A stretch of 64,000 nt of DNA from the IMG/VR virus record IMGVR_UViG_3300028840_008185, positions 124,001 to 188,000 of that record; one strand, given 5' to 3'. A program made the translations under genes and the position numbers. This document shows, one piece after another, positions 32,958-63,699 of this stretch. The notes below the pieces were generated by a model, which had not been told where the DNA came from, searched no databases, and saw only the letters and a list, made by a program, of their open reading frames with translations. The stretch's first letter is position 1. Each line of letters opens with the position of its first letter.

Positions 32958-33009
32958 TGACTCAGCGGTGTAGTTTCTGCCTATTTTTGACTCAGCGGTG
33001 TAGTTTCTG
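32958..33009. repeat. 22-bp direct repeat (period 30) in the 5' end of ORF 32670..33026
   Basis: tgactcagcggtgtagtttctg at 32958-32979 and 32988-33009, giving RNYTAES twice. Confidence 0.9.
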
Positions 33010-33022
33010 TCCATTGGAAACC

Positions 33023-35528: not shown

Positions 35529-35688
35529 TTCTTTTCACCTTACAAAAAGCAGAGCGAGAAAAACTGGCCAGAAAAGAACAACATAAATCAGGCGCAACAC
35601 GCTCTTGGTTTTTAGATGCTCATCTCCAGAAAACAATCCGGCCAAAATAAGTCCGGTTATGAGATAGGTAATTACCAGTGACACCCAA

Positions 35689-36880: not shown

Positions 36881-37516
36881 TCACCTCAAGATAACCTGTT
36901 CGCCACTGGACTGACGATCCACATAGGAAGAATCCCGTTTCCTCTTGGGATTCTTCATCCAGATCTCACCATCGGGAAGCTGGACAGCGGGGATGTAAAT
37001 GATGTCGGAGCCATCATCGCACTCCTCAAGGTGAAACTTGGAGCCATCGGGGAAGGGAAACTCTTCCGTGTTAGATGCCCAACTCGGCTTGTTGAACCCA
37101 TAACCAGGACCAATGTCGATCCTGTCCATAGCATCCATCACAAGCTCAAGAGTGCAGGCAGAAGCGAAGAAGGTGTAGCCCCTCTCATAGGACTCTGGGT
37201 TGTCGGTCATGGAAACATCCAGACACGGACCAAACCCAAACCTGTTCATCGCACCAGCCCGAGAAGACCACGGACCCCTCAGAGCTTTCTTAGAGCCATC
37301 CTTCATCGTGATGTTGAAAACCCTACCACCGAAGCCATCACCGGGCCTCACGTAGTAGTAGAAAGACACATAGCCACCAAGCTCAGCATAGTAGAGCCCT
37401 TCTCGCTCCTCATACCGCAAGTCAGCGAGATCTGGCATCTTGTCTACCAGAATTTTAATAGTGGGCTCATTGGCCCAGCCATCTGCCCAATCAACTTTTC
37501 CCTTCAGGATATTCAT
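36881..37516 (-). CDS. Hypothetical phage protein
   Basis: GFGGR.F.I.MKDG....L.GPWSSR motif. Confidence 0.75.
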   Translation of the reverse strand: MNILKGKVDWADGWANEPTIKILVDKMPDLADLRYEEREGLYYAELGGYVSFYYYVRPGDGFGGRVFNITMKDGSKKALRGPWSSRAGAMNRFGFGPCLDVSMTDNPESYERGYTFFASACTLELVMDAMDRIDIGPGYGFNKPSWASNTEEFPFPDGSKFHLEECDDGSDIIYIPAVQLPDGEIWMKNPKRKRDSSYVDRQSSGEQVILR

Positions 37517-37956
37517 TGTATCTCCTTGATGCAGTTCTTACAAACCTTAACCGGCTTGAAATCGATTGTCACTGTTGTTTCTATTGGCTTGGGACACGAA
37601 CAATGCTCTGTGTCCTCCTCTTCCGCAACTTCCCCCACAGCTATGAAAACGGGGATGTTTCTATACCTGTGAAGGTTTGCGTCTGCGGCTAAAGCCAGAC
37701 GATGCTCACCAGAACCCAATATCTCCATACTATAACTTCCAGCACCAGCGGCAAACTTAACTCGCAAACCTGGCTCAGAAGCGCCGCTATTTCCATCATG
37801 AACGATAATAGACTCTGTGGAATACACCGTCAAGACCCTGCCCTTAATGTCTCGTGGAAAGTAGTTGTTTCCCTTCCACCAGACATCAAGAAAATGCGGA
37901 TTAAGGCAGACCGTTTTACCAGATTCTATCTGTGAGGCTTTCATCATCCTACCCAA
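37513..37956 (-). CDS. Hypothetical protein with divergent shared C-terminal zinc ribbon
   Basis: CSCPKP...VCKNCIKEI. Confidence 0.65.
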   Translation of the reverse strand: MGRMMKASQIESGKTVCLNPHFLDVWWKGNNYFPRDIKGRVLTVYSTESIIVHDGNSGASEPGLRVKFAAGAGSYSMEILGSGEHRLALAADANLHRYRNIPVFIAVGEVAEEEDTEHCSCPKPIETTVTIDFKPVKVCKNCIKEIQ

Positions 37957-39075
37957 TAATTCACTATGTAGTCAGCCTCCCAATTGGCGAACCCCAGGGC
38001 TTCAACCGCATCGAAAGCATCCTGATCCTCAAGCTCGCCCTCGCCAATCTTCAACAGCACATTGTCGAGATCCTCAACGATGTTGGGGTTGTCTCGCTTG
38101 ATTCTCTGCTCGCTTACCCAAACCCCAAAGTAGCGCTCATAGGAAAGAGGCATTTTCTCAACAGTATCGTAGAGAGCATCGGGGGAGACATAAAAGGGCA
38201 TCGTCCACCCATCCCCGTGCTGCACCTTGATACAGACAATCTTCTCACCGCCGGCATAAAACTCCGCTTCCAGAAGTTCAACCGGCAGCCAAAAGGTCTT
38301 CTTCTTGCCAGTGGCGTCAGCGAGATAGGTTGTAGCTAGTAGCGCTTCCATATCACCACCCAATCCTTTTTAAAGCAAACCAAACTCTAGATCTCATTTG
38401 GTTTTTGAAAAAGTGAAAACCGCCCGGATGGCCCTTGTTGCTCCTAACCCTGCCGCCGATGTTGCGCCAGAGTCTCAGCCATTTCTCATCCCAGCCATGA
38501 AAGGCAAAGCCCAACCGCTTCCAAAGCCTATCTTGTTCGATGGGCTCTATACCTGGGCCAGGAACGTTTGCCACTCTTGCTCCTCCTGATCTTTTCGCGC
38601 CAACTTCATCTCTCTACGCCTCATGTCTTTTATTTCCGCAACCTTTCTCTTTAGCGCCATGTCGGCAACGGCTTCTGACTGGGCAACATCAGCATGTAGT
38701 TCAAGAACGTGCTTGTCGTCTTTTGTGGCCAACTCGCCCTCAATCATCGGACAATGACCCTCATGAAGAGTAACGACATGGCCAGGATAAACCTTGCTGA
38801 AGATCAGCATGTCTTCCAAGCATCGCTCCTCAGTCCCGTGGCAAGAAAGGGCAGGGAAAAGACCCGCAGCGTCATAGACCATACAAGGGCTCTGTCCATC
38901 AATTAGCCAGTGAAACATCTACCTCTCCTTGTTCATTCGCTTCAGCACTTTACTTCGTAGCTTCCGAAGCTGTTCGCGAGCACCCTCCGCACTTTCCCTA
39001 TTTGGGTCGGCATATTCAGCCTGCTCGTCCAGCCACTTCTTAATGACTGCATCTTCAAACTTTTCAAGCAGTTTC

Positions 39076-39459
39076 TTATCGGTCATCTTCACTTTCCTGT
39101 TTGATTAGCGCAGGCTCCATCTGCTCCCAAGACTCAAACTTCTTGAATTGAATCGACTCCTGCCCCTCGTATAGTGCCTTGGCAATCCGGTGCATACCGT
39201 CTGCAATTCCCCAATTTGGAGCGATGATTATCGGGTAGTTCAGGTCTGCCTGCCTAATCCTTTCCATGTGTCCCCGCGTGTCATCGCTCGTTTCGAGAAT
39301 TTCCGCTGGGCTTTTATCACCACTCCAACACTTAGCTTGCATGTAGTCGTGCCAATCAAGAGCTTCGATCCCAAGCTCTTGAGTTAAAAGCCCCTCAGCA
39401 AGCTCCCATAGCTTAAACACATCGTAGGTTTTATCTTCGTGGCTATAAGTATGCGTCAT
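39076..39459 (-). CDS. ParB/Srx-like N-terminal domain protein
   Basis: H..RI..ADL.YPII...IADGMHRIAKA. Confidence 0.8.
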   Translation of the reverse strand: MTHTYSHEDKTYDVFKLWELAEGLLTQELGIEALDWHDYMQAKCWSGDKSPAEILETSDDTRGHMERIRQADLNYPIIIAPNWGIADGMHRIAKALYEGQESIQFKKFESWEQMEPALIKQESEDDR

Positions 39460-39918
39460 CTTCCCACAAACCTCCACAAAGCGTAATCTGATCGGCAATA
39501 GGAACACTGACAGGGGCGCGGCTGAATCCATCTTCCATCCTCTTTACAGCATTGATTCTTGTGAGGAACCAACCCCTTTAGGCACTTTGGGACAGAATCT
39601 TTACCGGGCACGCCGAAGTCTGCATGGGGGCAGCCTTGACAGTATTCTTTCTTAGCAGCGTCCCAAGCAAGCTCAAGATCCCTCTTGGTTGGGCGCTCTG
39701 GGTCCTGGCGATAGGGGCTGCTCATTAGTCTTCTTCCATGTAGCAGAAGTGCCCACAAGCAGGACACTCTCCCTCTGGGATGATTGCGCCAGGGGCAGCC
39801 AACTCGTTAAGGTCTTCAGCGCTCAGGGTTAGTTCAGCAGGATCGTAACGAGCACCACAATTCTCGCAGACAGCCAATCGCTCTCCATCCATTAGTCGTC
39901 CCTGTTCCTTTCCATTTG

Positions 39919-40000
39919 TGACCGGGGAGGGATTCGAACCCTCACACCCAGAGGTAGGGGATTTTAAGTCCCCGATGTCTACCAGTTCCATCACCCGGCC
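39919..40000 (-). tRNA. tRNA-Leu(UAA)
   Basis: Cloverleaf with long variable arm; GGGGA-CTTAAAA-TCCCC; GAGGG-TTCGAAT-CCCTC. Confidence 0.93.
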
Positions 40001-40008
40001 ATAATCTA

Positions 40009-41242
40009 TTAAAGCCGCCCTGTCCAATACTTCACGTAAAGCGTCCACGCTGATTGCCAAAGCTCATCTAATATGCGCCTCAAGGGCCACGCTAAGCAAA
40101 CCTCCAGGGATCGCTTTAAGACTTCATCTTTCAGCGGCCCTCCCATGTCATTTTCTCTAGGTTCGATTATCATTGCCCCAGAAACTTTCCCCACAGTTTC
40201 AGGTCATCACACAGCTCAAGAATGTGGCTCTCTAAGCCAAAGCCCAACCTCTCCATAATGGTTGGAAAGAGGCCAGAGTGCATGAACAAACCCCAAAGCT
40301 CATTTCGACCTATAGCCCTCGGCTCAATCACCATAATGGCCCCGAGTATCCCAGATTCATGCGCAGAAAGTCGTAGAACCAGAGAAGGTTAGTGACCATT
40401 GGGTTAAGACCACCGCGCAACCGATATGCGACTCCACCCCAGAGCTTACCGAAGGGAAGCGCCATATCTACACAAAGCAAATCGCTCTTGCCGCTTCTTC
40501 CTAAGTTAATCTCCATGGTCTAACTCTTTCATGCAGGGTATTAGTCCGCTTGACCTGAGACGATGAATGTGCGAGCCTATTGCCCTATCAAACTGGCGAA
40601 TGAGTCTCCTCCGCACAAATTCAGCAACAGTCATACTAGGGTAATGTGGCCACAACCTAAGCTGACCCCAAAGCTGATGGAAAAGCTTGTGCCCAATCCC
40701 ATCTCTTTCGCCGTTGTATCGGTTCTTTATCTCCATCAATCAGGCAGCCTCTTATACTTGTAGCCACGAGCCATGATGGAGAATACAGAACCAATCCTGG
40801 CCCCGCAAACCCAAGCCCGAATGTCGTAGTTGTCTGGGTGTCGCTCAAGCACCTCCTCACGGGTGACTTCCCTTTGTCCCTTTTCCGCTCCGGTTCTTGG
40901 ATCTAGTTCAGTTTCCAGAAACATTTGTTCCAGCCTTTCCTGCAAATTCACGAAGTTCGTCCCAGAGACGAACCTTCCATTTGTGCCAAAGCTCTCCAGC
41001 CCAAGGCGCTTTGCGTCTAGCCTTCCCCAAAGTATGATTAAAGAGAAAAGCGTGACCCATTCGATATATGTAGTTACTCCTGGGCTCAATCACCATAACT
41101 TATATCTCCTTATGTAAGAATCAAAGTTATGGCGAGTGATTCCCATAAGGTATTCGTTAATGCTCGCCATAAAATAAAGGCCGTGAATATTCCACAGACT
41201 TGCCTTACGACAACCCCTATTACGCTGCGCCTTGATCTCCAC
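40009..41242 (-). CDS. Micro-ORF array: 40009..40173, 40170..40334, 40328..40516, 40506..40739, 40908..41096, 41090..41242
   Basis: Starts MIIEPR, MVIEPR (x2), MEINL, MEIKN, MEIKA; segments LFHQLWGQL, ELWG, KLWGGV, RLWDEL. Confidence 0.7.
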
Positions 41243-42075
41243 TAAGCAACCCTCCTCACTTCCCGCTTCCCACTATTCACCACCACGCAAGTCTTATGCT
41301 GTGCCTTGGGAGCCCCACAATACCAGCACTTTCCGTCATCGTCGCTGTATGCATGGTTCTCTGGCCTCAAGCTCTCCAGGTTCTCCCGAAGGGTCACACG
41401 ATCCTGCTTGGAAAAACCGGTGCCCTCCTTCTCCGCCAAACGCTTCCTGTTTCTCAACGCCTCAGTGATAAAGCTCATTTAATCCTCCTCTGGCTTAGAG
41501 AGTCCACCAAAATCTACAGTGAAGCTCCTCGTTGGCTTTAACCCAGCGATCCAAGACATCATCGCCGTCGCAGTCTTCACAGGTCATAAAGTTGCACACG
41601 CCCCAGGTCTTACCGTCAAGGTCTTTAACTTGTCTGTTGTCGCCATAAACCCAACGCCAAACATCCCCGACCTTGAACTTATATCCACACAAATAGCAGC
41701 GGAACTTTTCCCCTGGCCCATGTCCACCCCATTTGGCCTTAAGGTCTCTCTCCGTAGCCACTTGCGGCTTTTGGTCCGTGAAGCTCATTTCTTTAATCCT
41801 AATTTACAAGTAGCGCCCACCAGCACCAGCCTGCGAATGCTGCTAAGGCTATTGCCAAAACAACCTTCCCAAACATAATCAAATCGTCCATTTATCACTT
41901 AGCCATCGCCTGCGCTGCACGGTGGTAGTCCGCCTCGATCTTCTTCATGGCGTCGGTGGCAGAGACAAGGCCACGGGTTCCAGTCGAGATGGTCTCGATC
42001 ACCCTGTTGCCGTCCATGACCTTGATTTCCTTGTTCCCTTCCCAGAGAAGTTCAAGGCCAAAGGCTTCCAGTCGT

Positions 42076-43991
42076 CTACGGATCATAGGTTTCATTTGCT
42101 TCCTCCTCCAGAAAACGGATTAACTCTTCCAGTTCTTCTTCGGTGGGTTCTCTTTGAGGTTCCTGGTTGAGGCGGGGAGAGCCCAACTCCCTTTCCACAT
42201 CTTCATCAAATCTCCGACCCAAACGCCGATCAAGTTCGGTGTCGTAAGTTACTTGTCCCCAGTAATGAACTATCCAATAGGCAGCCTCAAGAAGCTGGAG
42301 ATGTAATTCATTTATAACATCACGAACTTTGAACATATTTTTAAGTCTAATCTCCATCAGTCCTCAACCAGATAGTATTCCACATTCCACCACAGCTCGT
42401 TATCATCTTCGGGCAGACCAAGCCAACCAGCAGCCATAGATTCCGAGTATGCCTCCCATGCCGCCTGAGCATCAGCCGGGCTCAGAATGTACCCACGCGT
42501 AGCAGCGATGCGCACAATACGCTCGACATCATGCTGATATTCGCCCTCCGCCTTATTCTTGAATCTCAGAGTTTTCATGTGCTCTCCAAGGTAGGCGTGG
42601 GCACATACGTGTGTGCCCACGCCTTTGGGTGCTACTCCTCAGCTTCCTCCTCCGAGCTTTCCTCTGCCTCGGGCTCCTCCTCCTGCTTCTGGCCCTGTCC
42701 GCCGCCCTGGATCTTGCCAACGATTTTGCCCAACTCCTTGTTGAACTTTTTCCTTTGCTTCTCGAACTCTCTTTCGGCTTGGACCATCTTCTCGCGCAGC
42801 TCGAAAGCCTGACGCATTAGGCCCAGTGCCTTATCCTTAGCCTTTTCTGCACGCTCCTTGTTGATTTCCTTGAGAGCTTCCTCAAGGACATCGCTCGTTT
42901 TCATTGGCTTGGCTGCGTCAAACCCAACCAAATCCTCCAAACGTGCCGATGGATCTTTCGTCTCTTTTGCCATTACTTCACTCCTTGCCGTCAAGAATGT
43001 TTTGGATTGAGTCGATGCCCTTCCGAACTTTCTCGGAGTCCTCGACAACTCTTTCTGCCTTAGAGACGCTAGCCTTCATGCCCAACAGGGCCATACGTAG
43101 CTCACTGATGGGATCCGGCGAAGCCTTAGACAAAACCCTATCTTTAAGGTCACTAAACATCTTACCCAAAATCTCCTGGTCTTCGGGGAGGCAGGAATGG
43201 CTCAGTCTCCAGGTAAGCCCCTTCTTCTTGGCCCGGAAGATGCCCCTGATAGCGTGGCTTACAGGAACCTCGTTCGCCTGCCGCCTCATTGCTGTGAAAA
43301 CTTCTCCCTCGATCTCGGCGTCGGATTTACTCTCGATCTTTCTCACACCTGCAAGAGCTTCCTTTGCGGCGTTGTAAATCCAGATAAGATCCTCGGGCGT
43401 TAGTTTCTTGTTATGGTGTGCTAAATGCATATTGTATCTCATCCTCCTATTTCGGCGTGCGAGGCGCATGTTTACTCTTTGTTCTTCCAAACATCCCGCA
43501 GCCGCACGTACAGGAATGGTGGAATGGCCATGCGATCAATGTAGTCTCTCAAGACCACAACCTTAACGGTGTGAATCACGTTGCCAAGTTGCTTCAACGC
43601 TTCGCCCCAGATGTTCCTCGGTTCTGGCACTTTGATTTCCATTTTGTCTAAGTCCCATTTCCAGTGCAAAAGGTGAATCGAAAGCCCATCCCCACTACCA
43701 GCCAAGGGTGTATAAGCTCCTGGATATATATACTGCAACATGATCCACATTCTATTACTAACCACATTCCAAGGATATTTTACTTCGCCCATATCCTTTT
43801 TGGGGCGTATAGGTTTAATTTCCATGTGGATTCCAGAAGCCTAACCAAGCAGTAAAGCGAAGACGCAGCACTTCCGAAAGCGACTGAACCCCACCGCCGA
43901 ACCTATAATACAACTCCAAGGTCAAGTGTCTCCAGACTGCATCAGGAATTCGGGGAATGCGGTTGAGGGTTATTCGCGGCTCAATCCTCAT
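42076..43991 (-). CDS. Last micro-ORFs: 42076..42357, 43472..43825 (two fused units), 43815..43991
   Basis: Starts MEIRL, MEIKP...MEIKV, MRIEP. Confidence 0.65.
42593..42624. terminator. Strong hairpin downstream of 42632 ORF
   Basis: aggcgtgggcaca(ta)cg(tg)tgtgcccacgcct inverted repeat; no U-tract on the minus strand. Confidence 0.55.
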
Positions 43992-44828
43992 CAACCGCTT
44001 CCCACTTCAGCCTAACTATGGCTTCTGGGCCCAAACCAATGGGTTGAAACTCCTCATAGAAATCACCGTCCCACACCGATTTGGTTCTTGATGGAGCTAT
44101 TTGTCCGTGGTCACGCAGATAAGAATAAGTGACGACTACCTTTTCTGCACCATCAGGCGAATATCCGGTGCCCCAGATAATTACCCTTTGTCCTTTGTGG
44201 ATATGAATCGGCCAGCCCTTTTCACGCTGCTCGCCGCCAATTCTGACGCCCACGCCCATTACTCTTTCACCTCTTTCAAAGGCTCGCCGCGCAGCATCTT
44301 CACGCCGCCGTGCTCCGCGACACCCACATGCCCATGAACCTCAATCTCGTTTCCGTCTGGACCCTTGATCAGGTAGTAAGGTTCGTTATGAATATCGACT
44401 TCCTTCTTGCAGAACAGACACAAAGGTTTCTTTTTGCTCATCTTTTCACCACTCTCTCGCAGCAGCAATGGCGGCTAAAATGATATAGCCTCCCGGTATT
44501 TCTTCAGGTTCGTTTGGCTTCCTATTCCTGAACTTTTTGAGTATCTTGAGTGCCTCTTGAAACTCGTCTTCCGAACAGTTAGGTGCGTAAAGTCCCCTTT
44601 TCCTTTCCCTCACTGATGCGTTGAGATAAAGCAAATGGCCAAGGAAAACCTTGGCCGCGTCAAAGGCAGACATCTCATTAATCCTCCTCCTCTGCTGGCC
44701 AGCCGTAGATCTGGTCCCTCAAGTAGTCTCTGGCTGGCAGGCAGCCATCTTTGATCAAGATGGCGAATCCAAATATATGGTGTATTGTCCAAGCCGCCAA
44801 GGCGGCCACTGCCTCACCCAGTCTCATC

Positions 44829-45245
44829 TTACGTCAACTGGGCTTTACAGGAAGAAGGAACATTTGCATTCTGGAAATCGGTGCAAGACATCGCCTTGAT
44901 TGCTGGGAAGCAAACGGTATATAGCTCTACACCATCCCGTAGCGATGTGATGCTGGGACAATCCCATGCATCTTCCAGATCTTTTTGGAACTTGGCTGCC
45001 GCTGTCGCATCTCCACTGCACGCCAACATCTTGTCTCCCAGCACCCTGGCAATGTCATAGCACGCCTGAACCGGGTCAACGTTGGACGGCAGCGGCGGCA
45101 GATCCGTCTCAGGCGGCGAAGCATCGGGCAGTAACACATCAGCAACGCTCCCATCCGGTAGCACAGAGGGCGCTGGCTCGTCAGACGTGTCGCCACAGGC
45201 CAAAAGAAACAGGCTAATGAATCCAAGAACAATTGCTTTTCTCAT
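44829..45245 (-). CDS. Myxobacterial-style Cys-containing lipoprotein
   Basis: LLACGD lipobox, Pro/Asp-rich linker (PDGSVAD..PDA), six further Cys. Confidence 0.8.
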   Translation of the reverse strand: MRKAIVLGFISLFLLACGDTSDEPAPSVLPDGSVADVLLPDASPPETDLPPLPSNVDPVQACYDIARVLGDKMLACSGDATAAAKFQKDLEDAWDCPSITSLRDGVELYTVCFPAIKAMSCTDFQNANVPSSCKAQLT

Positions 45246-45785
45246 CTCACTTAATCCTTCCTGTTGATGTTACTGTGGATCTACTTTACTTTTGTCTCTC
45301 TTCAAGAGTGCCTCCGCGTTGGTGCAGAGAATATCAAGATCCCTGGCGTCCTGCTGGTCGATCAGCGGCACAATGCCGTCTTTCATTTTGAACATCAGCG
45401 CCCAACCAATCAGTTCGCAGGAGGCAGCGGCGCTTGTATCCCACTGCACACAGCCCGACTTAAGAAGGGCTCCATAGCAGGACGTAAACTTCTCCTGCAA
45501 CTTATCCATCGCCTTGCAGGGTTCAGCCGCCATGTATTTCCTGAGACTCATTTCACCCTCTCATTTTCCTCCAGAGCAGCATTGCCCCAGTCCAAAGAAG
45601 AACTCCCAAAGCCAGAAGCCCCTCGCCAATTCCCATACAACAGCAGAAAAGCATCACCCACCTAGAAGCTGAAGAAGTTGCAGTGCTTAATCAGGAAGAT
45701 CCCACCAACGATGAGGCCAATCCAGACCATCACCATAATGACCAACATACTCCCAAAAAACCTACTCATCTGCATTGTTTCCTCC

Positions 45786-46238
45786 TTATTCTGTCGCAGC
45801 CTCAAAAACCTTGAGAGTTTCAATCCTCTCCATCTCGTCTTTTATCTGCGAGCTAAACTTGAAAATCCGCTGTGCTGGGCTCGTGAGTTCCATCTCGCCA
45901 TTATCCATTATTCCATTGTATTTCTTCTTGACAGGGAAAACGAGAACGGAAAGGAAACGTTCAACAACAGCGAGCTTGTTCTTGTAGACAAAACCAGACT
46001 TGCCATAGCCCACTCCTGTATAAATGCTTTTCTCATACCTCCAATGCTCAGGAGCATTCTCCATGAGCTTCAGGATGGTTTCGCCAAGGTGGGGCTCGGG
46101 CTGGGGAGCAGGTGGAACATCCTCCAGTATAGAGTCTGCCAGCTCCCTGGTTTCCAACTTAAGCTTCAGCTTGGCAGCTTCAGCCTCCGCAGCCTCAGCC
46201 CTCAGAATCGCTGCGCCGTGATCATTTCGATAAGACAT
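45786..46238 (-). CDS. Hypothetical protein with YRND coiled-coil N-terminus
   Basis: MSYRNDHGAAILRAEAAEAE. Confidence 0.65.
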   Translation of the reverse strand: MSYRNDHGAAILRAEAAEAEAAKLKLKLETRELADSILEDVPPAPQPEPHLGETILKLMENAPEHWRYEKSIYTGVGYGKSGFVYKNKLAVVERFLSVLVFPVKKKYNGIMDNGEMELTSPAQRIFKFSSQIKDEMERIETLKVFEAATE

Positions 46239-47400
46239 TTGCCCTCCTAAAAGGCCGGAACATCTGTTACTTTCTGCCTGGTGCGCTCCGTCCATTCAAT
46301 CTTACCACACCGCTTGCACTCCCTAAACCACCGCTTGATCTCCTGGCGAGGCACATCCATAGGCAAGCGCCGATCCACCCCCATAGTCCCCGGAGGATCC
46401 CCTGGATCGCGATAAGCCTCGTGGATGATCGGATCGTATACCGGCTCCGTCCAGTCGTGCTTGCAGGCTTTCTCTATCAATTCCAGCTTGGCTTTCTCCT
46501 GCTCCCACTCCTCTTTTAGCTGGGCAACCCTGCGACGAAGCCGCCTCGGATCCTCACAGGCCATGTCCATGCTTTTTAGCTGATCCCCAGATGTCATTCG
46601 CACGTCTCCTCGTATTTCCTCAGAAGGTGGAGGAAGTCATCACCGCACCACAGCTTCCCGATTCCTGGGCTGGTCATCAGATAATACCCAAGTGGGGTTT
46701 CTGTGGAGAACCTGGCCGTTTCTGTCCGAGGCGCGACCTTCAGAGCCTCTTCCTCATCGTAGTCATCAGCCATACAGTCGATGCCCTTATAGCAATTAAC
46801 CACAACGATTTCAAAGCTTTCGGGGGGCAAGGTTCACCATGTAGTGCTCGAAAGAGTTTATCTCACCGATGAGATTCATAACCTCATCGAGTCGTTCGTT
46901 TACGCCCATTTCCCTTCTCTCTTGAGCTTCCTGAAGTTCCTATCCGTCACCAGCCACTTGTGCAGGAAGTTAGGCCTCCACACCCAAGACCTAAGCTTGC
47001 CGGTTCGTGGATGAGAGCACACCACACAATAGGTTATGGTTTCAGGAGCAGGATGACCACCAGTCCAAGCAGACTCGCAGTTCGGGCAAACCTCAGTGAA
47101 GAGATTAACGAAGAAGTGTTTAATCCTCTCCATCCTCATCTCCTCTGAACGTCTGGTTCCACTCGGCTGGAGTGATGCCGCTGATCAGGAACTCACGCTC
47201 ATCGGCAGAACGGTGGGGTAGAATCATCTGGATGTTTCGTCTGTCTGGGCTCGCCATCTCCTCAGCTTGAGCGATGGTGATGCTGACCTCATAGCGCTCA
47301 CCAGTCACGCTACAGGTCTTACTGATCACAACCCTGTCATTCTTGTGGTCGTAGTTTTTCTCAAGACTGTGAAAACCGAGAAGCATTGTTTCCTCCTTTA

Positions 47401-47898
47401 TCACCTAAGAGCGTCGTAAGCCTCGCCCCAATTCTTGATGAGCTTTGCCTGGGCAGGACTCGGCCTAAAGATTACTATTTCTACTCCCTCATTTTCAACG
47501 ATGCACTTGCATCCAATGGCTCGCAGAATGTTGCCATTATTAGTCGCATAGATCGTATCTCTGTAGCCAATGATATGTCTATGCTTAAACTTCTTACTAC
47601 ATCCTTGCTCGCACATCTTCCCAAGCAGCTCGGTTCTTTTGTTGGAGAATTCCATCCTGAGCTTGGAATCATCACTACAGTCTTTCATAGCGACCACAAA
47701 GAACGCAACGAGTCCGAGAGCCGCCATTACGCCCGCCCACATGCCAGCACGTTTGGCCAGCTTAATTTTTGATTCACGAGTCATCCTGGGCTTCTCCTTG
47801 GGCTTCTTCTTCGCGGCTATTGCCGCCTTTAGCTCCAGGTTCTCCCGCTCCAGCGTGTCGTTTCGAACAAGCTGTGCTTGTAAGTCATCTTTATACAT
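47401..47898 (-). CDS. Membrane protein with YKDD coiled-coil N-terminus
   Basis: MYKDDLQAQLVRNDTLERENLELK, then a TM segment and a Cys-containing outer domain. Confidence 0.7.
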   Translation of the reverse strand: MYKDDLQAQLVRNDTLERENLELKAAIAAKKKPKEKPRMTRESKIKLAKRAGMWAGVMAALGLVAFFVVAMKDCSDDSKLRMEFSNKRTELLGKMCEQGCSKKFKHRHIIGYRDTIYATNNGNILRAIGCKCIVENEGVEIVIFRPSPAQAKLIKNWGEAYDALR

Positions 47899-48184
47899 TA
47901 TAGCCCCTATCGAAATGGGCCGTTGGCCCGTTTTCTCTCACCAAGGATATAATCTATGATGTTTTGAGCCATGTCATTATCACAATATTTTGCTATACTT
48001 TCCTTGTCTTCTGGCTTCACTTTACCCCTAATGTTCCAACAGAGTTCCACCTTGGTATGCATGGGCTCGCCGGTGTTGTATTGGTAATGCTGGTCTTCCC
48101 AAATGAGAAGGTCTAAGCTCCACCCAGACTTCTCCAGCGGAATGGATAGAAGTGTCTCCGAGCCCCAGATTTTCTCTTTTCCCA

Positions 48185-48646
48185 TCACATCCCCGCGTTG
48201 TAGTTCTTGAGATCCGTGATGCTGACCAAACACCCATAGCCCTCAACATCGCAGCGAGCCACTGGCCCAGTGATAGGGGCGTTGCGTATCGGCAAACCTG
48301 TAAGTTTGGTGAAGTAAGCTTGATTCTCGCAGCATGGACACCACATCTTCTTTTTGTGCCCACAGTTGCCGCACTCCCCGACCTCATCGAAGTAGTCCGT
48401 CTCGCCACACTCCTCGCAGGCTTTAGGGTCGAACTCCTCAGCCTTACACTTCTCCAGAGGCCACTCGCCCTGAATCTGCCCGCACTCAAGGCACCAGTCG
48501 AACTCCACGTAGTCGCCACCACCAACTCCCATGTCGCCGGGAACGTAGTCGCTCTTATCGTATTCCCCGATGGAAGTGCCACAACAATCCGCGCACTTGG
48601 CGGTAATGCTGGCAACCCTTTCGCTTCCACAGTTTTTACACTTCAT
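48185..48646 (-). CDS. Multi-zinc-ribbon protein
   Basis: Several CxxC pairs; GGGDY..F.WCL.CGQIQG motif. Confidence 0.7.
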   Translation of the reverse strand: MKCKNCGSERVASITAKCADCCGTSIGEYDKSDYVPGDMGVGGGDYVEFDWCLECGQIQGEWPLEKCKAEEFDPKACEECGETDYFDEVGECGNCGHKKKMWCPCCENQAYFTKLTGLPIRNAPITGPVARCDVEGYGCLVSITDLKNYNAGM

Positions 48647-49164
48647 TCTCTCGCCCTTTCAAGCATTTATAGCACAGTGTATCATCCTGAAAATAAGGAT
48701 GGTGATGGTCTTTTGATACAGCCAATCTCCCACAATGACATCTGAGGGGATTATCCGCATCCTTAGTGCGACACACTTTTACACAATAGCCATCAGGGCC
48801 CATATCAAAACACCACCCTCTTTTGAGGATGTCAGCCATAGCAATATGAAGTCCGGGAGCTACAATGCCACCTTTTTGATGATATTTATCACTCATTTCT
48901 TCTTTTCCTCTTTCAATTCCTTCCTGCCCCAAACCTCAACGATTTCCCAGCCTTCTTCGGTCTTACCAGTATCGGGATGGACCACAGGAACAACGTTTCC
49001 CAACTTTGCGTGTTTCTCTTTGAGCCAAAGAACCGTGTAAAAGTAAGACTGGCCTCCGTCCAGCGGAATCTCTTTCCATCTGCTTCCGCACGAGGAGCCA
49101 GAACCCTTTGGATTTCTTAGCTTACACTGGACTATAATCTTCTTTTTCTTGGCCATATTCCCTC

Positions 49165-49344
49165 AAAAAGCTCAGTCGTCAGCCCCACCACCGACAGTTG
49201 AGCACGCACTACACCTTATCTACTCGTCCCTACACTGGACAGGATTCACTCAGGCGCGGAGAGAGAGGCGTAGGAATCATCTCCACTTAGAGTTGTAGCG
49301 CTCCCTGTGGCGACTCTCTGGCGGGATCAAACCAGAGTAGCGCC
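49165..49344 (-). ncRNA. Candidate structured intergenic RNA with kissing loops and terminator
   Basis: 5' hairpin, three-way junction closed by GCGCTACA/TGTAGTGC, loop-loop complement CCTACGC/GTGTAGG, then GCTCA..TGAGC-TTTTT. Confidence 0.55.
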
Positions 49345-49352
49345 GTTGCCTT

Positions 49353-49538
49353 TTACTTGCTCTTCTTGGGCGGCTCCTCCAGAACCTTCTTCACCCTCTC
49401 GGCTTTCTCGAACACCGCCTCGCCGTGCTTGATCACGGGCTCGCTGTATTTGTTATACACCGTCACCGCACCCACCACAGCCAGCACCAACACGCCAAGA
49501 ATCATCAGCTTACGGAACGTGCTTTTTCGTCTCGCCAT
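49353..49538 (-). CDS. Small single-pass membrane protein, paralog of 61098..61340
   Basis: MARRK...IL.VL.LAV.G.V.(V/I)Y..Y..PV..H. Confidence 0.75.
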   Translation of the reverse strand: MARRKSTFRKLMILGVLVLAVVGAVTVYNKYSEPVIKHGEAVFEKAERVKKVLEEPPKKSK

Positions 49539-50072: not shown

Positions 50073-50948
50073 TTAGAACAGGATTGAAGCCGGGCTATTC
50101 CAGGAGGTATATAGGTGTCCATCCTCCTGGAAAACCAGCGACCGAATCCCTCCAGCCTCAGCTCGCTCCTGAACGCAGTAGTCGCTATGTGCGATGGAAA
50201 TCCCTTCCAAATCCCAGAGTTCTGTGCCTTCGTTTAGTGTGCGAATCTTTCTGCCACGCTTTCGAAGCAACCTCTCCAGATTATACACCACTCCGCCATA
50301 TTCCTCATCGCTAAGTCCATTGTCCTCGATCCACTTGGCGACCTCTGGATCGACATGGTGTTCAGGAGAGACGATCCTTCTAAGCGTAAGTTGCCTTACG
50401 CCATTCTCTATACAATAAGAAACCAGTTGCGCCGCGCTGCGGTCCAACTTCTTGGTGAGATTAACCGTTAGGCGAACTACCATGCCGAAGTGATTGATTC
50501 TCTTTATCAGCGGGATATACTGACTGAACTGCCTATCGTTGTCCATAGAAAGAGCAATCACATTAAAGCCAGCACGATCCAGCCTCAGTACCAGATCGTC
50601 GTATTCACCGTGCGGTGTCACGGGGAGCCAGTTTTCTGGCGCAAGTGACTTGAGCAACTGAACACCGTTGGTCTGGATTTCAAGTGGAAACTCTCTAAAG
50701 TGCTCAGCCACAGACCGCACAAAATCCAGGTTCAGCACTGGTTCGCCCTTGCCAGTGAACAGGACCGATGTGACTCCAGCTGCTTTGGCTACAGCTTTCA
50801 CCTTCTCCAAGTTGCGAAACATCAGGCTGGTGTTCGACTCCATCAGCCCGGTGAGCTTAGCCACGCAGTAGGGACAGTTCTTATCGCATCTTGGGTCAGC
50901 ACTCGGAACACTAATGGTCAGATTCTCAGCCTGTAGATCTCTACTCAT
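50073..50948 (-). CDS. Radical SAM protein
   Basis: CDKNCPYC, FTGKGEP, IQTNG. Confidence 0.9.
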   Translation of the reverse strand: MSRDLQAENLTISVPSADPRCDKNCPYCVAKLTGLMESNTSLMFRNLEKVKAVAKAAGVTSVLFTGKGEPVLNLDFVRSVAEHFREFPLEIQTNGVQLLKSLAPENWLPVTPHGEYDDLVLRLDRAGFNVIALSMDNDRQFSQYIPLIKRINHFGMVVRLTVNLTKKLDRSAAQLVSYCIENGVRQLTLRRIVSPEHHVDPEVAKWIEDNGLSDEEYGGVVYNLERLLRKRGRKIRTLNEGTELWDLEGISIAHSDYCVQERAEAGGIRSLVFQEDGHLYTSWNSPASILF

Positions 50949-56022: not shown

Positions 56023-56099
56023 TGGTGCGCCCAGCAGGAATTGAACCTGCGGCCAACGGATTAAAAGTCCGCTGCTCTACCTGGCTGAGCTATGGACGC
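56023..56099 (-). tRNA. tRNA-Lys(UUU)
   Basis: Cloverleaf; GCGGA-CTTTTAA-TCCGT; encoded CCA. Confidence 0.95.
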
Positions 56100-59304: not shown

Positions 59305-60117
59305 TCACACATCTTTGTTTCTCCTTGCCTTATTCCAAACCCTCAAACAAGTTGAGCAGTTTGGAATGAACTCCGAATAGAACACCCCGGTGAACTCCTT
59401 GAACCTTTCACTGAATCCACCGTCAAGATACTCAGACACATCAGCATACTCCCAGGCACCGAACGGGCACTTAGATATTATGCCCTCTTCGTTGATGAGA
59501 AAGCTATATTTCCTATCAGGTTTACCACAGTATCTTGAGAACGAACCGTAAAGGTTATACTCAAACCGGGATCTTCCAACAGGAACAACCGACTCTTCTT
59601 TTGTCTGCTCCTCGGTTGCTACTCTGTGTGGGATGTTGTTTCTGGAGCAGAACTCCTCAGCGGCAGCCACGTTCTTGTTGGTGTGCCACCGGTCTTTGGA
59701 GATGGCGAAGATTATCAGGTGTGAGTTGGCAAGTTGCTTAACTCGTTCGCTCTCTGTCTCCACCCAATCTCCATTAGTAGCGATTCTCACCACCTCAACT
59801 CCATCACACAGAGTTGAGATGACATCAAACCACTCGGGGTGCAAAAAGAACTCACCACCCATTATGTTAATGTATGAGATGTTATTGCTTACAAGAAACC
59901 TACTCACTTCTCTCGCCACATCAAGAGACATGAAGTTGTCTCCTTTGGGCGAGCAAGAGAAGCAGCAATGACTACAAGACTGCGTGCATTTGGTAGTGAT
60001 TCTGATTGTGGGGGTTAGAACTCTGTGGCAAATGTCCCTTTTGTCACATGCCTCACAGTTGCAGCACTGCTTACCATCACACGCAGGGTCAACACAAATG
60101 TCGCACCTTGATGTCAT
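59305..60117 (-). CDS. Radical SAM protein with Cys-rich N-terminus and SPASM/twitch-like C-terminus
   Basis: CTQSCSHC, MGGEFF, ATNG, C...I..EG.I.KC...C..C. Confidence 0.9.
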   Translation of the reverse strand: MTSRCDICVDPACDGKQCCNCEACDKRDICHRVLTPTIRITTKCTQSCSHCCFSCSPKGDNFMSLDVAREVSRFLVSNNISYINIMGGEFFLHPEWFDVISTLCDGVEVVRIATNGDWVETESERVKQLANSHLIIFAISKDRWHTNKNVAAAEEFCSRNNIPHRVATEEQTKEESVVPVGRSRFEYNLYGSFSRYCGKPDRKYSFLINEEGIISKCPFGAWEYADVSEYLDGGFSERFKEFTGVFYSEFIPNCSTCLRVWNKARRNKDV

Positions 60118-60129
60118 TGTTCTCCTTTG

Positions 60130-60203
60130 TGGGCCCTCTGGGATTCGAACCCAGGATCGACCGGTTATGAGCCGGCGGCAGTAGACCGCTGTGCTAAGGG
60201 CCC
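60130..60203 (-). tRNA. tRNA with CAU anticodon, probably Ile2 (lysidine type)
   Basis: GCCGG-CTCATAA-CCGGT; GGGCCCT acceptor with paired 1:72 and no 3 G-C initiator pairs. Elongator Met not excluded. Confidence 0.85.
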
Positions 60204-60620
60204 ATAGTTACTAGGTGGGGCGACGGGAGATGTAGTGCTTCGTGCCGCACTTGTCGCAGCGCACCCAGGTGCCGATGAAACGAGCCTTCATGGGGGTCTT
60301 GCACTTCATACACTCGATCATTGTTTCCTCCTTTAAGCCGCCATTGCTAAGGCTGACTCTTGGTTGACGATGTTATAGAAACCCCTGAAACGGTGCTCTT
60401 CCGGGGGAATCCACCCGTCTTGAATGAAGCTCATGTACAACTCATCACGGCGGTCGCACAGGTGGTCAACCCTGTCCCATTGCTTCCAGAACCGCAAGGT
60501 GCCCACAATCGACATAACACTGCCAAAAAGAATGAGCGCGGCAATGAGAGCACCGATGAAGTATGCAAAATTCAACATGGATTCATACATTTGTTCCTCC
60601 GTTGTTGTTCTTCTTCTTAG

Positions 60621-60755
60621 AGACCAGCGTAGGATTCGAACCCACTGTATGCCTAACTCACCACCGTTCGGCATACCATCCTTCCGGGGGCTTTGAGAAG
60701 CTAGCAGCAGGGGTGAGATCTGCACTAGCCGCAACGGCTCCACCGGAGACTGGCC
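60621..60755 (-). ncRNA. tRNA-like RNA (acceptor + T-arm) with non-canonical ~100 nt multi-hairpin body
   Basis: GGCCAGT/GCTGGTC acceptor, GTGGG-TTCGAAT-CCTAC T-arm, internal stems GCTAG/CTAGC and GTATGCC/GGCATAC. Confidence 0.65.
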
Positions 60756-61097
60756 CATATGCTAAGTCCTAAAACGCACAGCCTAAGTAGACGATAGTGT
60801 TGACGGTGGGAAGTAAGAGCAAAGTCCCTATCCACCCCATCTCGCCCTCATCGTGGAGGGCACCAGCAACGATCATGATGAGCCATGCCAGAGCTTCCAC
60901 CGACATCAGGATCAACGCCACAATCCCGAGAGCAAGCGGAGCCTTGTCGATGAACGTCAGCCCGACGTAGGTCCCAGCCACGAGCATGGGCAGCGCAAAG
61001 AGCAGAGCGAATGGGCTTTCCGTGAACCCTTGGTAGAGGAAAAACAGGAGCATCAGCCCCAAAAGCGAAGCGGAAACTATAGTGTATGCAAACATTC

Positions 61098-61340
61098 CTA
61101 CTCCTCCTCCAGAATCTTCTTCAGCTCCTCCAGCGCCTCCACCACCTCATCACGACCCTCATCGACGCCCTCGCTCACATGCTCCACCGCCTTCTCGGTA
61201 TGCTTCACCGCCTCGGTGGTGTGCTCCCTCACGGGCTTGTTATACTGCTTGTAGATGGCAACGCCACCGAACACTGCGAGAGCCAGCACACTGAGAACCA
61301 GAATCATGCTGAGCAAGCCCTTCTTCTTACGTCGCGCCAT
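61098..61340 (-). CDS. Small single-pass membrane protein, paralog of 49353..49538
   Basis: Shared N-terminal 40 aa pattern. Confidence 0.75.
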   Translation of the reverse strand: MARRKKKGLLSMILVLSVLALAVFGGVAIYKQYNKPVREHTTEAVKHTEKAVEHVSEGVDEGRDEVVEALEELKKILEEE

Positions 61341-61357
61341 TATCTTCTCCTTGTTGG

Positions 61358-61759
61358 TTAAATCAAATCCCTGTCCGCAAACGACACGAATTTGTCGGAA
61401 GCGGAAATAACTATGTGATCCAGAAGTGTAATCCCTAATAGCTCACCAGCTTGCACTAACCGCTGGGTCAAGCTTTTGTCGTCTTTGCTTGGCTCAGTGT
61501 CACCAGACGGATGATTGTGAGCCACGATTACCGCTACGGCGTTCCTCTTTACTGCCTCCCTAAACACATCCCGAGGATGAACCTCAACCGTATTTGCGCT
61601 GCCCATAGCGATCATCGCGGGGCTGCCAATTGGCTGATGAAGTCCATTTAAGCTAAGGACAACAAAGCACTCCTGAATGCCCAGAGATTCCTCTGGAAAT
61701 CCAGGGCGAACGGCAGCGGCTGCTTCAGAGGCGCAGCTTACCTTGCCGCCACTCATCAT
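61358..61759 (-). CDS. RadC-like JAB/MPN domain protein
   Basis: QE.F.V, VHPRDVF, AHNHPSGD..PS.DD, LLDHIVI. Confidence 0.93.
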   Translation of the reverse strand: MMSGGKVSCASEAAAAVRPGFPEESLGIQECFVVLSLNGLHQPIGSPAMIAMGSANTVEVHPRDVFREAVKRNAVAVIVAHNHPSGDTEPSKDDKSLTQRLVQAGELLGITLLDHIVISASDKFVSFADRDLI

Positions 61760-63389: not shown

Positions 63390-63553
63390 TGGTAGTACGA
63401 GCTGGATTCGAACCTGCATCTCCTAGGATGACTGCCCTCGTCACCACCCCTACCTCCTCCATCAGCTCAGTCCGCAGAACCAATGGGGGTTTCAGAGTAA
63501 TGGCTCAAACAGCCAGCGGACACCTAGGCGTCTTACCATTAGACCATCGCACA
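63390..63553 (-). ncRNA. tRNA-like RNA A (164 nt) with 95-nt insert in the anticodon loop
   Basis: Acceptor TGTGCGA/TCGTACT+A+CCA, D-arm GTCT-AATGGTA-AGAC, stem CCTAGG/CCTAGG, AGAT, T-arm GCAGG-TTCGAAT-CCAGC. Confidence 0.85.
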
Positions 63554-63558: not shown

Positions 63559-63699
63559 TGGCTGCGTGTGTTGGACTCGAACCAACATCTCCCGGAACAG
63601 CCATGCCTACCTCCTCACCTATGCACCCACGACATAGGCAAGGGCTCAGCATGACTGGTGGGTTTCCTCCGGGCGTCTTGCCAATTAGACCACCACGCC
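63559..63699 (-). ncRNA. tRNA-like RNA B (141 nt) with 71-nt insert in the anticodon loop
   Basis: Acceptor GGCGTGG/ACACGCA+G+CCA, D-arm GTCT-AATTGGCA-AGAC, stem CCCGGA/TCCGGG, AGAT, T-arm GTTGG-TTCGAGT-CCAAC. Confidence 0.85.

What the first reader, a model, noticed from the sequence alone, without database searches (positions are those of the whole stretch)
60621..60756. Third architecture: acceptor/T-arm minihelix enclosing a multi-hairpin body
A canonical T-arm and a 7-8 bp acceptor close ~100 nt with no normal D or anticodon arm. Inside are CTCC/GGAG, GCTAG-GCAG/CTGC-CTAGC and a long GTATGCC/GGCATAC arm next to the T-stem. It is too short for tmRNA and has no tag ORF. With the other three, this gives four aberrant versus five normal tRNA-shaped genes, too many to dismiss easily as decay.
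Basis: partly seen in the sequence, partly recalled or inferred. Interest (0 to 1): 0.6.

Follow-up and report, generated by a model that had tools for sequence, protein, structure and literature searches.

The report
Non-decoding tRNA-shaped RNA in giant phage
A 135-base gene in a giant phage keeps only the acceptor/T-arm "top half" of a tRNA, which related phages preserve through compensating mutations, while its middle is a lineage-specific pair of hairpins; it is therefore a selected tRNA-derived RNA element, built like phage T4's still unexplained "species 1 RNA", and neither a decoder nor junk.

Summary
On the minus strand at 60621-60755, a 7-bp acceptor stem and a canonical T-arm close about 103 nt. 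That body folds into a long irregular hairpin and a 7-bp hairpin next to the T-arm, with no D arm or anticodon arm. ARAGORN (with introns and tmRNA) and Rfam (tRNA, tRNA-Sec, tmRNA, Y RNA) do not call it.

It is not coding. Homologues of the downstream 85-aa gene all start at the internal ATG.

Four orthologous loci in other metagenomic phages carry the same minihelix just upstream of that gene. In these, 55 of 60 stem cells pair and four pairs show compensatory changes. All four orthologs encode N73-CCA, against 1 of 37 normal tRNAs in this phage. The body varies between orthologs (19, 19, 36, 53 and 103 nt) and cannot be aligned.

The full-size form has the same layout as T4 rnaC (acceptor, long hairpin, second hairpin, T-arm, complementary loops). 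A covariance model of rnaC matches only the T-arm.

The same phage record carries a reduced type-A RNase P RNA, CCA-adding enzyme homologues and RtcB.

Best reading: a tRNA-derived, non-decoding processing module and stable RNA, recognised by RNase P. No RNA data were available, so expression is untested.

The parts
60749..60755 (-). Acceptor stem, 5' strand (GGCCAGU)
   Evidence: Pairs 7/7 with 60622-60628. Pairs 2-71, 5-68 and 6-67 change on both sides among five orthologs.
60683..60747 (-). Long irregular hairpin (arm 1). It is closed by UCCGG/CCGGA and has the apical loop AUCUCACCC.
   Evidence: Minimum-energy fold. Absent from orthologs L074, L075 and L196, and replaced by a 6-bp hairpin in L076. 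One G-to-A strain variant in its upper stem (L216).
60712..60717 (-). CUCACC in the apical loop of arm 1. It is complementary to GGUGAG in the loop of arm 2.
   Evidence: Read directly from the sequence. Shuffled loops give a match of 6 nt or more in about 6% of trials, so this is only suggestive.
60647..60676 (-). Hairpin 2 (GUAUGCC / 16-nt loop / GGCAUAC), one A before the T-stem
   Evidence: A hairpin at this position is present in L076 and L196, and as a 3-bp remnant (GUG/CAC) in L074 and L075. Only its 3' strand can be aligned across orthologs.
60657..60662 (-). GGUGAG in the loop of hairpin 2, the partner of CUCACC
60629..60645 (-). T-arm GUGGG UUCGAAU CCUAC
   Evidence: The T-loop is identical in the five orthologs except for A/G at one position. 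Pair 49-65 shows a compensatory change. It is the only part matched by the T-even rnaC model, at 8.1 bits.
60622..60628 (-). Acceptor stem, 3' strand (GCUGGUC)
60618..60621 (-). Discriminator U followed by CUA. The four orthologs have U/C followed by CCA.
60591..60617 (-). A-rich trailer with the Shine-Dalgarno sequence GGAGG (60596-60600) of the next gene
   Evidence: The same layout is found in all orthologs.
60333..60590 (-). Downstream 85-aa gene (starts MYESM...). It is the syntenic anchor of the element.
   Evidence: The close homologues are 82-85 aa, and the two found by the exhaustive search are 84 and 79 aa. All start at this ATG. Gene callers nevertheless extend it to 141 aa through the element (P0121).
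60769..61095 (-). Upstream 108-aa membrane-like ORF. Its stop codon lies 13 nt before the element.
   Evidence: Absent in ortholog L074, where the 80-aa ORF precedes the element.

Best explanation
The element is a tRNA-derived, non-decoding, tRNA-shaped RNA module inside a long minus-strand operon of a giant phage of about 450 kb.

Its functional core is the acceptor/T-arm minihelix. Relatives also encode CCA after it. This core is the minimal substrate of RNase P and of the tRNA 3'-end enzymes.

Inferred steps:
1. The element is transcribed together with its neighbours.
2. RNase P cuts at G1 (60755). The enzyme could be the host's or one built on the phage's own reduced RNase P RNA. The cut separates the upstream cistron.
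3. The 3' side is either trimmed to release a compact RNA of about 135 nt, or left in place. If left, the base-paired minihelix caps the 5' end of the mRNA of the next gene.

The body (long hairpin, second hairpin, possible loop-loop pairing) is a lineage-specific addition. It keeps the RNA compact, as in T4 rnaC, but it is not what selection has preserved at this locus.

Shown here: the structure, the absence of decoding arms, the non-coding status, the orthology, and covariation in the minihelix. Inferred: every processing step.
For: Structure and absence of D and anticodon arms:
-.
- No call by ARAGORN, with introns up to 300 nt or in tmRNA mode.
- No Rfam match up to E = 10.

Not coding:
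- Three homologues of the downstream protein (61-67% identity) are 82-85 aa. The two further ones from the exhaustive search are 84 and 79 aa. All start at the internal ATG.

Orthologs:
- L074, L075, L076 and L196 carry a homologous minihelix whose CCA ends about 17-30 nt before the same gene's ATG.
- 55 of 60 stem cells pair, against 16-29 of 60 when the partner is slid by one or two positions.
- Pairs 2-71, 5-68, 6-67 and 49-65 change on both sides.
- Bodies of 19 to 103 nt cannot be aligned.

Encoded CCA:
- Present in 4 of 4 orthologs, in elements B and C, and in one further aberrant element.
- Present in only 1 of 37 canonical tRNAs of this phage (Fisher p = 0.014).

Genomic context:
- A second, 48-nt bare minihelix with CCA abuts a Shine-Dalgarno sequence elsewhere in the genome.
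- The element sits 13 nt after a stop codon, and its discriminator lies 27 nt before the next start codon. No promoter-like or terminator-like site is adjacent.
- The same record carries a 270-nt type-A RNase P RNA (145.8 bits, cut-off 100) inside its tRNA array. It keeps the conserved core and the GGU aligned with the CCA-binding loop.
- The record also carries two CCA-adding-type nucleotidyltransferase homologues and RtcB.

Established knowledge:
- Hairpins of acceptor stem, T-stem and T-loop are cut correctly by RNase P.
- CCA at the 3' end favours cleavage.
- RNase P also cuts operon mRNAs (PMC11143913).
Against: - No RNA data. No listed run is RNA, and only contigs could be laid. Expression, ends and cleavage are therefore all untested.
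- Element A itself has CUA rather than CCA.
- If only the minihelix mattered, the well-folded 103-nt body with complementary loops would be unexplained. The bodies of L076 and L196 are also neat hairpins.
- Ordinary tRNAs already punctuate this operon, so a separate processing element is not obviously needed.
- The most distant homologue of the downstream gene (L197, 46% identity) has no such element.
- The phage RNase P RNA was not found in seven more distant phage records. It lies in a part of the record that IMG/VR labels as provirus.
Confidence: 0.55

Rival explanations
1. The element is a trans-acting tRNA mimic whose body is the active part, as may be the case for T4 rnaC. The minihelix only provides processing and stability. 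The kissing hairpins bind or decoy a host or phage factor, for example a tRNA-targeting defence nuclease, a tRNA-modifying enzyme or the ribosome.
For: - The layout and size match T4 rnaC. Both have an acceptor stem, a long hairpin, a second hairpin directly before the T-arm, and 6-nt complementarity between the two apical loops.
- In T-even phages the loop-loop helix pairs in 7 of 7 homologues, with one compensatory change.
- The neighbouring element B keeps its insert, including a covarying pseudoknot, in a relative. Structured cargo on a tRNA frame is therefore under selection in this phage group.
- The body of A folds better than shuffled sequence (z = -2.1).
Against: - The body is not conserved at the orthologous locus. 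Two orthologs lack it, and L076 shows no clear loop-loop match.
- The loop complementarity in A arises in about 6% of shuffles.
- The rnaC covariance model matches only the T-arm.
Confidence: 0.25
2. The element is a decaying tRNA pseudogene or a tRNA gene disrupted by an insertion, and it has no present function.
For: - No anticodon arm.
- CCA is mutated to CUA in A.
- The body is hypervariable.
- One strain variant breaks a pair in the long hairpin.
Against: - Acceptor stem and T-stem keep pairing through four double-sided changes, while everything around them has diverged beyond alignment.
- The T-loop is nearly invariant.
- The position relative to the downstream gene is kept in five lineages.
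Confidence: 0.08
3. The element is a true decoding tRNA with unusual arms or introns. One such reading is a tRNA-Cys(GCA) with a 15-nt intron in the long hairpin, spliced with help from the phage's RtcB.
For: - The phage set lacks a called tRNA-Cys.
- U-GCA-G sits in the long hairpin and could be flanked by a GGCUA/UAGCU stem if 15 nt are removed (reading).
- RtcB is encoded.
Against: - This reading requires a D arm with a 3-nt loop and a variable region of about 53 nt.
- ARAGORN with introns does not call it.
- Orthologs of 51 nt cannot decode.
- No bacterial or phage splicing endonuclease was identified here.
Confidence: 0.04
4. The stretch is the N-terminal coding part of a 141-aa protein (60333-60758), as automatic gene callers predict.
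For: An open frame runs through the element in frame with the downstream gene. A cluster of this 141-aa product exists in the protein database.
Against: - All homologues are 79-85 aa and start at the internal ATG, which has a strong GGAGG 6 nt upstream.
- In the orthologs the upstream stretch is 51-85 nt of minihelix, not an extension of the frame.
Confidence: 0.03

Closest known systems
Phage T4 rnaC (species 1 RNA, 139 nt; annotated at AF158101 70908-71046)
   Same: - Lies in a phage tRNA region and has a similar size.
- A 7-bp acceptor-like stem closes the molecule.
- A long irregular hairpin is followed by a second hairpin directly before a canonical T-arm (CCGGG UUCGAAU CCCGG).
- Six nucleotides are complementary between the two apical loops.
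- Function unknown (PMC3014915, PMC9697503, PMC12685909).
- Absent from Rfam.
   Different: - No detectable sequence homology. The rnaC model matches only the T-arm of A.
- The rnaC body is conserved with covariation across T-even genera, whereas the body at the A locus is not conserved.
- rnaC sits among tRNAs, while A sits between protein genes.
- The rnaC homologues do not encode CCA.
t-elements of plant mitochondria (tRNA-like acceptor/T-arm structures at mRNA ends)
   Same: Non-decoding tRNA-like structures next to protein genes. They are thought to be cut by RNase P and RNase Z to make mRNA ends (PMC1920247, abstract seen).
   Different: They occur in an organelle rather than a phage, and there is no sequence relation. 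Processing at A is inferred, not shown.
tRNA-like domain of tmRNA
   Same: Acceptor stem and T-arm without an anticodon arm. It is an RNase P substrate.
   Different: A has no tag reading frame, no set of pseudoknots and no G3-U70. It is far too short, and ARAGORN tmRNA mode finds nothing.
Canonical phage tRNAs, including type II tRNAs with a long variable arm
   Same: The acceptor/T-arm geometry is 7/5. A hairpin directly before the T-arm sits where a long variable arm would be.
   Different: A has no D arm and no 7-nt anticodon loop, and it is not called by tRNA models.
Neighbouring tRNA-shaped elements B and C (window 63559-63699 and 63390-63553)
   Same: - Same phage and same strand.
- Imperfect acceptor stem, T-arm and encoded CCA.
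- No credible anticodon loop.
- They share the short motif GGUGAG..UAGGCAU with hairpin 2 of A.
   Different: - B and C keep a D arm.
- Their extra structure sits in place of the anticodon loop.
- The insert of B is conserved, with a covarying pseudoknot, in a relative.

Membership tests
Canonical tRNA (Rfam RF00005) | Cloverleaf with a D arm and an anticodon arm carrying a 7-nt loop | tested here: not met
   Fold and reading of the sequence. ARAGORN gives no call, with or without introns. No RF00005 match up to E = 10.
Canonical tRNA (Rfam RF00005) | 7-bp acceptor stem stacked on a 5-bp T-stem, with a GTTCRANYC-type T-loop | tested here: met
   Covariation in five orthologs.
tRNA-Sec / allo-tRNA | 8/5, 9/4, 8/4 or 9/3 acceptor/T geometry, a long variable arm, and a UCA or other anticodon in a proper loop | tested here: not met
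   The geometry is 7/5 (8/5 only with a G-U to U73). There is no anticodon loop with U33. No RF01852 match up to E = 10.
tmRNA | tRNA-like domain plus a tag reading frame and pseudoknots, about 260-400 nt | tested here: not met
   ARAGORN tmRNA mode finds nothing in the whole record. Rfam gives no match. The element is 135 nt.
Bacterial Y RNA (YrlA type) | A Ro-binding stem formed by the two ends, with the tRNA-like module at the far end | tested here: not met
   Here the two ends form the acceptor stem itself. No Rfam match. Whether the phage has an Rsr/Ro gene was not searched.
T4 rnaC (species 1 RNA) family | Detectable homology to T-even rnaC | tested here: not met
   Model R1, built from 7 T-even homologues, matches only the T-arm (60629-60646, 8.1 bits, E = 4.6) with filters off.
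T4 rnaC (species 1 RNA) family | Layout: acceptor stem, long hairpin, second hairpin abutting the T-arm, T-arm | tested here: met
T4 rnaC (species 1 RNA) family | Loop-loop pairing between the two apical loops | tested here: inconclusive
   A has CUCACC/GGUGAG, but about 6% of loop shuffles do as well. Ortholog L076 shows no clear match. In T-even phages the helix is 100% paired with one compensatory change.
T4 rnaC (species 1 RNA) family | Body conserved among relatives | tested here: not met
   The bodies of the five orthologs are 19-103 nt and cannot be aligned.
T4 rnaC (species 1 RNA) family | Accumulates as a small stable RNA during infection | not testable with these tools
   No RNA run holds the sequence.
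t-element-like processing signal | Non-decoding acceptor/T-arm structure next to the end of a protein gene, conserved in position | tested here: met
   The element starts 13 nt after a stop codon, and its discriminator lies 27 nt before the next ATG. The same position before the same gene is kept in four orthologs.
t-element-like processing signal | Cleavage by RNase P and/or 3' tRNA nucleases in vivo | not testable with these tools
   This needs RNA end mapping or an enzyme assay.

The most novel reading that the evidence does not exclude
Giant phages of this group may use the tRNA top half (acceptor/T-arm minihelix with encoded CCA) as a portable handle that RNase P can recognise. The handle would be cut by a phage-encoded minimal RNase P RNA. 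It would serve two purposes: punctuating operon mRNAs, and releasing fast-evolving structured RNA cargo. The cargo would include A's paired hairpins, B's pseudoknotted insert and the bare 48-51-nt forms. On this reading T4 rnaC is the long-known but unrecognised first example of the same system.
Probability: 0.2. Interest if true: 0.85.

Novelty: new variant of a known kind. Interest (0 to 1): 0.6.

Why it matters
Phage tRNA regions have been known since the 1970s to encode tRNA-like stable RNAs of unknown function, such as T4 rnaC and rnaD.

This locus shows three things:
- The same layout exists in an unrelated giant phage from sediment and seawater.
- Selection acts on the acceptor/T-arm minihelix and its CCA, not on the body.
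- The phage record itself carries an RNase P RNA.

Together these turn a vague class of aberrant tRNA genes into a testable idea: tRNA top halves act as processing handles for mRNAs and small RNAs.

There is also a practical point for annotation. Gene callers read a 141-aa protein through the element, and tRNA finders miss it.

Tried and rejected
- blastn of 60000-61500 against the phage collection found no match.
- Two motif scans of IMG/VR, built from the motif shared by A, B and C plus a T-arm, gave only chance hits in coding DNA.
- Loci anchored on the neighbouring radical SAM gene (L002-L007, L043-L050, L072, L073) keep tRNA(CAU) next to that gene but not the A locus. They do contain other aberrant tRNA-shaped elements.
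- The closest IMG/VR relative by a conserved 646-aa protein (G001, 72% identity) is a fragment without the tRNA region.
- A looser T-arm+CCA scan of IMG/VR returned mostly ordinary tRNAs: 64 of 81 hits, with 17 odd ones not followed up.
- The single metagenome scan (T-arm plus the start of the downstream gene) found only the same phage in three samples. There was one G-to-A difference in the long hairpin.
- Sequencing runs: four DNA holders and no RNA holder. Laying contigs on 4,001 bases showed no variation and no joints.
- The MAFFT alignment of the five orthologs (A4) split the 5' acceptor strand, so pairs were counted by script instead.
- A TilS-like gene lies next to tRNA(CAU) in relatives but was not found in this record.
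- RNase P RNA was not found in seven more distant phage records.
- No genetic code other than table 11 was used.
- The exhaustive protein search was used once, because the word search gave only three homologues of the anchor gene.

Full report
**What is there**

The window is bases 124001-188000 of a 318-kb IMG/VR virus record. The same sequence also lies on a 452.6-kb metagenome contig. All genes run on the minus strand, and the record holds about 40 ordinary tRNA genes.

Read on the minus strand, the finding is a 135-nt unit:
- Acceptor strand GGCCAGU (60755-60749).
- One C.
- A long irregular hairpin closed by UCCGG/CCGGA, with the apical loop AUCUCACCC (60747-60683).
- A 6-nt linker.
- A 7-bp hairpin GUAUGCC/GGCAUAC with a 16-nt loop (60676-60647).
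- One A.
- A textbook T-arm GUGGG UUCGAAU CCUAC (60645-60629).
- Acceptor strand GCUGGUC (60628-60622).
- Discriminator U, then CUA.

The small CUCC/GGAG hairpin competes with the pairing that closes the long hairpin. The whole stretch and the body alone both fold better than shuffled sequence (z about -2.1 to -2.2). The assembly is solid, because single contigs at about 170-180x span it without differences in two runs. Both runs may be the source sample.

**It is not a member of a described family**

ARAGORN does not call it, even with introns up to 300 nt or in tmRNA mode. Rfam gives nothing at the gathering thresholds. A permissive scan of 60300-61100 up to E = 10 also gives no match for tRNA, tRNA-Sec, tmRNA or Y RNA. 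The geometry is 7/5, not that of tRNA-Sec or allo-tRNA. No loop has the form of an anticodon loop.

**It is not coding**

An open frame of 141 aa runs through the element into the next gene, and public gene calls use it. However, the homologues of that gene are 82-85 aa in the word search and 84 and 79 aa in the exhaustive search. All begin at the internal ATG (60590), which has GGAGG 6 nt upstream.

**Orthologs**

Four contigs that carry this 85-aa gene (57-67% identity) have a homologous minihelix just before its ribosome-binding site. These are L074, L075, L076 and L196.

Across the five sequences, 55 of 60 stem cells form standard pairs. The figure drops to 16-29 of 60 when the 3' partner is slid by one or two positions. 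Pairs 2-71, 5-68, 6-67 and 49-65 change on both sides while keeping the pair. The T-loop differs at only one position.

The body between the acceptor strand and the T-stem is 103 nt in A and 53 nt in L076, where it forms two shorter hairpins. It is 36 nt in L196, with one 9-bp hairpin abutting the T-stem. It is 19 nt in L074 and L075, with a 3-bp remnant. Only the 3' strand of hairpin 2 can be aligned.

The most distant homologue of the gene (46% identity) has no element. Near-identical strains in three samples show one G-to-A change in the long hairpin.

Selection has therefore kept the minihelix and its position. It has not kept the multi-hairpin body.

**Encoded CCA**

All four orthologs have N73-CCA, while A has U-CUA. 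In this phage only 1 of 37 canonical tRNAs encodes CCA, although nearly all encode C74. Encoded CCA is also found in the tRNA-shaped elements B and C and in one further aberrant element (3 of 8 against 1 of 37, p = 0.014). A 48-nt bare minihelix with A-CCA directly abuts AGGAGG-N4-ATG at G000 193530-193577.

**Resemblance to T4 rnaC**

The T4 record annotates rnaC (species 1 RNA, 139 nt) in its tRNA cluster. It folds into the same layout as A:
- An acceptor-like stem.
- A long irregular hairpin.
- A second hairpin directly before CCGGG UUCGAAU CCCGG.
- The 3' acceptor strand.

An alignment of seven T-even homologues down to about 60-80% identity supports every helix by covariation. That includes a loop-loop helix UUGACG/CGUCAA, which becomes UUGAUG/CAUCAA in a Yersinia phage.

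A has the analogous CUCACC/GGUGAG. By itself this is weak evidence, because it arises in about 6% of shuffles.

A covariance model of rnaC matches only the T-arm of A. The likeness is therefore one of architecture, not demonstrated homology. rnaC is not in Rfam, and papers up to 2025 state that its function is unknown.

**Context that bears on mechanism**

- The element sits 13 nt after a stop codon. Its discriminator lies 27 nt before the next start codon. No promoter-like or terminator-like site is next to it.
- The record carries a 270-nt class-A RNase P RNA inside the tRNA array (145.8 bits, cut-off 100). It keeps the conserved core and the GGU that aligns with the CCA-binding loop, but lacks most of P3, P12 and P13/14.
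- The record also carries two CCA-adding-type nucleotidyltransferase homologues and RtcB.
- A review of RNase P states that acceptor/T-stem/T-loop hairpins are cut at the correct site, that 3' CCA favours cleavage, and that RNase P also cuts operon mRNAs (PMC11143913).
- The neighbouring element B has an ortholog in L074. It shows compensatory changes in its long arm and in a pseudoknot, ACCCAC/GUGGGU becoming AACCAC/GUGGUU. Structured inserts on a tRNA frame can therefore be under selection in this phage group.

**Explanation and rivals**

The best-supported reading is a tRNA-derived, non-decoding module whose conserved minihelix acts as a handle for RNase P and for 3'-end enzymes. Cutting would separate the neighbouring cistrons. 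It would then either release a compact RNA of about 135 nt or leave a base-paired cap on the next mRNA. Every processing step is inferred.

The main rival is that the body is the active part, as may be true for rnaC. The layout and the good fold favour this. The lack of body conservation weighs against it.

Three further readings are unlikely:
- Neutral decay is contradicted by the covariation.
- A decoding tRNA with introns requires several anomalies and cannot apply to the 51-nt orthologs.
- The coding reading is contradicted by the lengths of the homologues.

**Novelty and limits**

tRNA-like stable RNAs in phage tRNA regions are a known but unexplained kind. New here are three points: a locus in an unrelated giant phage, the evidence that selection acts on the minihelix plus CCA while the body turns over, and the co-occurrence with an RNase P RNA in the same record.

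The limits are:
- Only five orthologs.
- No RNA evidence.
- An unknown host.
- IMG/VR labels the record a provirus, so the phage origin of the RNase P RNA rests on its position inside the one-strand tRNA array.

Noticed in passing
G000 7476-7745 (-), outside the window (locus L230:177-446): A 270-nt class-A RNase P RNA (145.8 bits, cut-off 100) lies inside the tRNA array of this virus record. It keeps the conserved core and lacks most of P3, P12 and P13/14. It was not found in seven more distant phage records. A search of the paper library found no paper pairing 'RNase P RNA' with jumbo or huge phages.
   Followed up: partly
window 63559-63699 (-) and L074:104-247: The tRNA-shaped element B has a D arm, a T-arm and encoded CCA, and a structured insert of about 64 nt in place of the anticodon loop. 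It is conserved in a relative, with compensatory changes in its long arm and in a pseudoknot (ACCCAC/GUGGGU becomes AACCAC/GUGGUU). ARAGORN's 'tRNA-Ser with intron' call lacks U33.
   Followed up: partly
window 63390-63553 (-): Element C is a diverged tandem paralog of B with a 90-nt insert. It has U1-U72 and A-A stem mismatches and a possible pseudoknot GUCCGC/GCGGAC. In L074 its place is taken by an open reading frame.
   Followed up: partly
window 6199-6259 (-): A 61-nt tRNA-shaped gene with acceptor stem, D arm and T-arm but no anticodon arm (Rfam tRNA, 37.8 bits). It lies about 15 nt before the Shine-Dalgarno sequence and ATG of the next gene.
   Followed up: no
G000 193530-193577 (-): A 48-nt bare minihelix with a perfect 7-bp acceptor stem, a 17-nt linker, a T-arm and A-CCA. 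It directly abuts AGGAGG-N4-ATG of the next gene.
   Followed up: partly
G000 42190-42272, 42102-42184, 33613-33685, 11992-12075 (-): Four further tRNA-shaped genes closed by a 7-bp acceptor stem and a T-arm, none called by ARAGORN. The one at 11992-12075 looks like a tRNA-Ser(GCU) with an odd D arm and encoded CCA. The two 83-nt ones seem to lack a D arm.
   Followed up: no
G000 31972-49384 (-), seven sites: The motif CCAAGGTC[CA]AG-N5-G[GA]GATACTTC occurs seven times on the gene strand and never on the other strand. Five copies are followed by tRNA-like bodies that lack a 5' acceptor strand. The 3' acceptor strand of these bodies pairs with sequence further downstream. This may be a phage promoter in front of truncated or permuted tRNA-like genes.
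   Followed up: no
G000, all 37 canonical tRNAs with a recognisable T-loop: Only one canonical tRNA (tRNA-Lys, window 56023-56099) encodes CCA, although nearly all encode C74. The record also encodes two CCA-adding-type nucleotidyltransferase homologues (G000 105043-105405 and 203310-203741) and RtcB (26298-27512).
   Followed up: partly
L051:1909-2047 (T4 rnaC) and homologues L052-L057: T-even rnaC has a covariation-supported tRNA-like fold. It includes a loop-loop helix (UUGACG/CGUCAA) with one compensatory change, in Yersinia phage TG1. The family is present in 748 phage records but is not in Rfam.
   Followed up: yes
L002-L007 (AT-rich phages of 94-186 kb with the same radical SAM gene): These loci hold dense tRNA arrays. 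A repeated motif, AAGAAGYCTAACAGCAA, precedes many tRNAs and several T-arm-only fragments.
   Followed up: no
L044:430-515, L048:3051-3120 and 4992-5066, L043:3169-3271: Relatives anchored on the radical SAM gene carry their own aberrant acceptor/T-arm elements of 70-103 nt without a normal cloverleaf.
   Followed up: no
window 4364-5821, 50073-50948, 59305-60117 (-): There are three radical SAM genes in the window. The third always follows a tRNA(CAU). In several relatives a TilS-like gene (PF01171) precedes that tRNA, which suggests it is a tRNA-Ile2 rather than a tRNA-Met. No TilS-like gene was found in this record.
   Followed up: partly
whole record: IMG/VR lists the record as a 318-kb provirus that is 79% complete. 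The same sequence lies on a 452.6-kb contig (L211) and on contigs from three or four sediment and seawater samples.
   Followed up: partly
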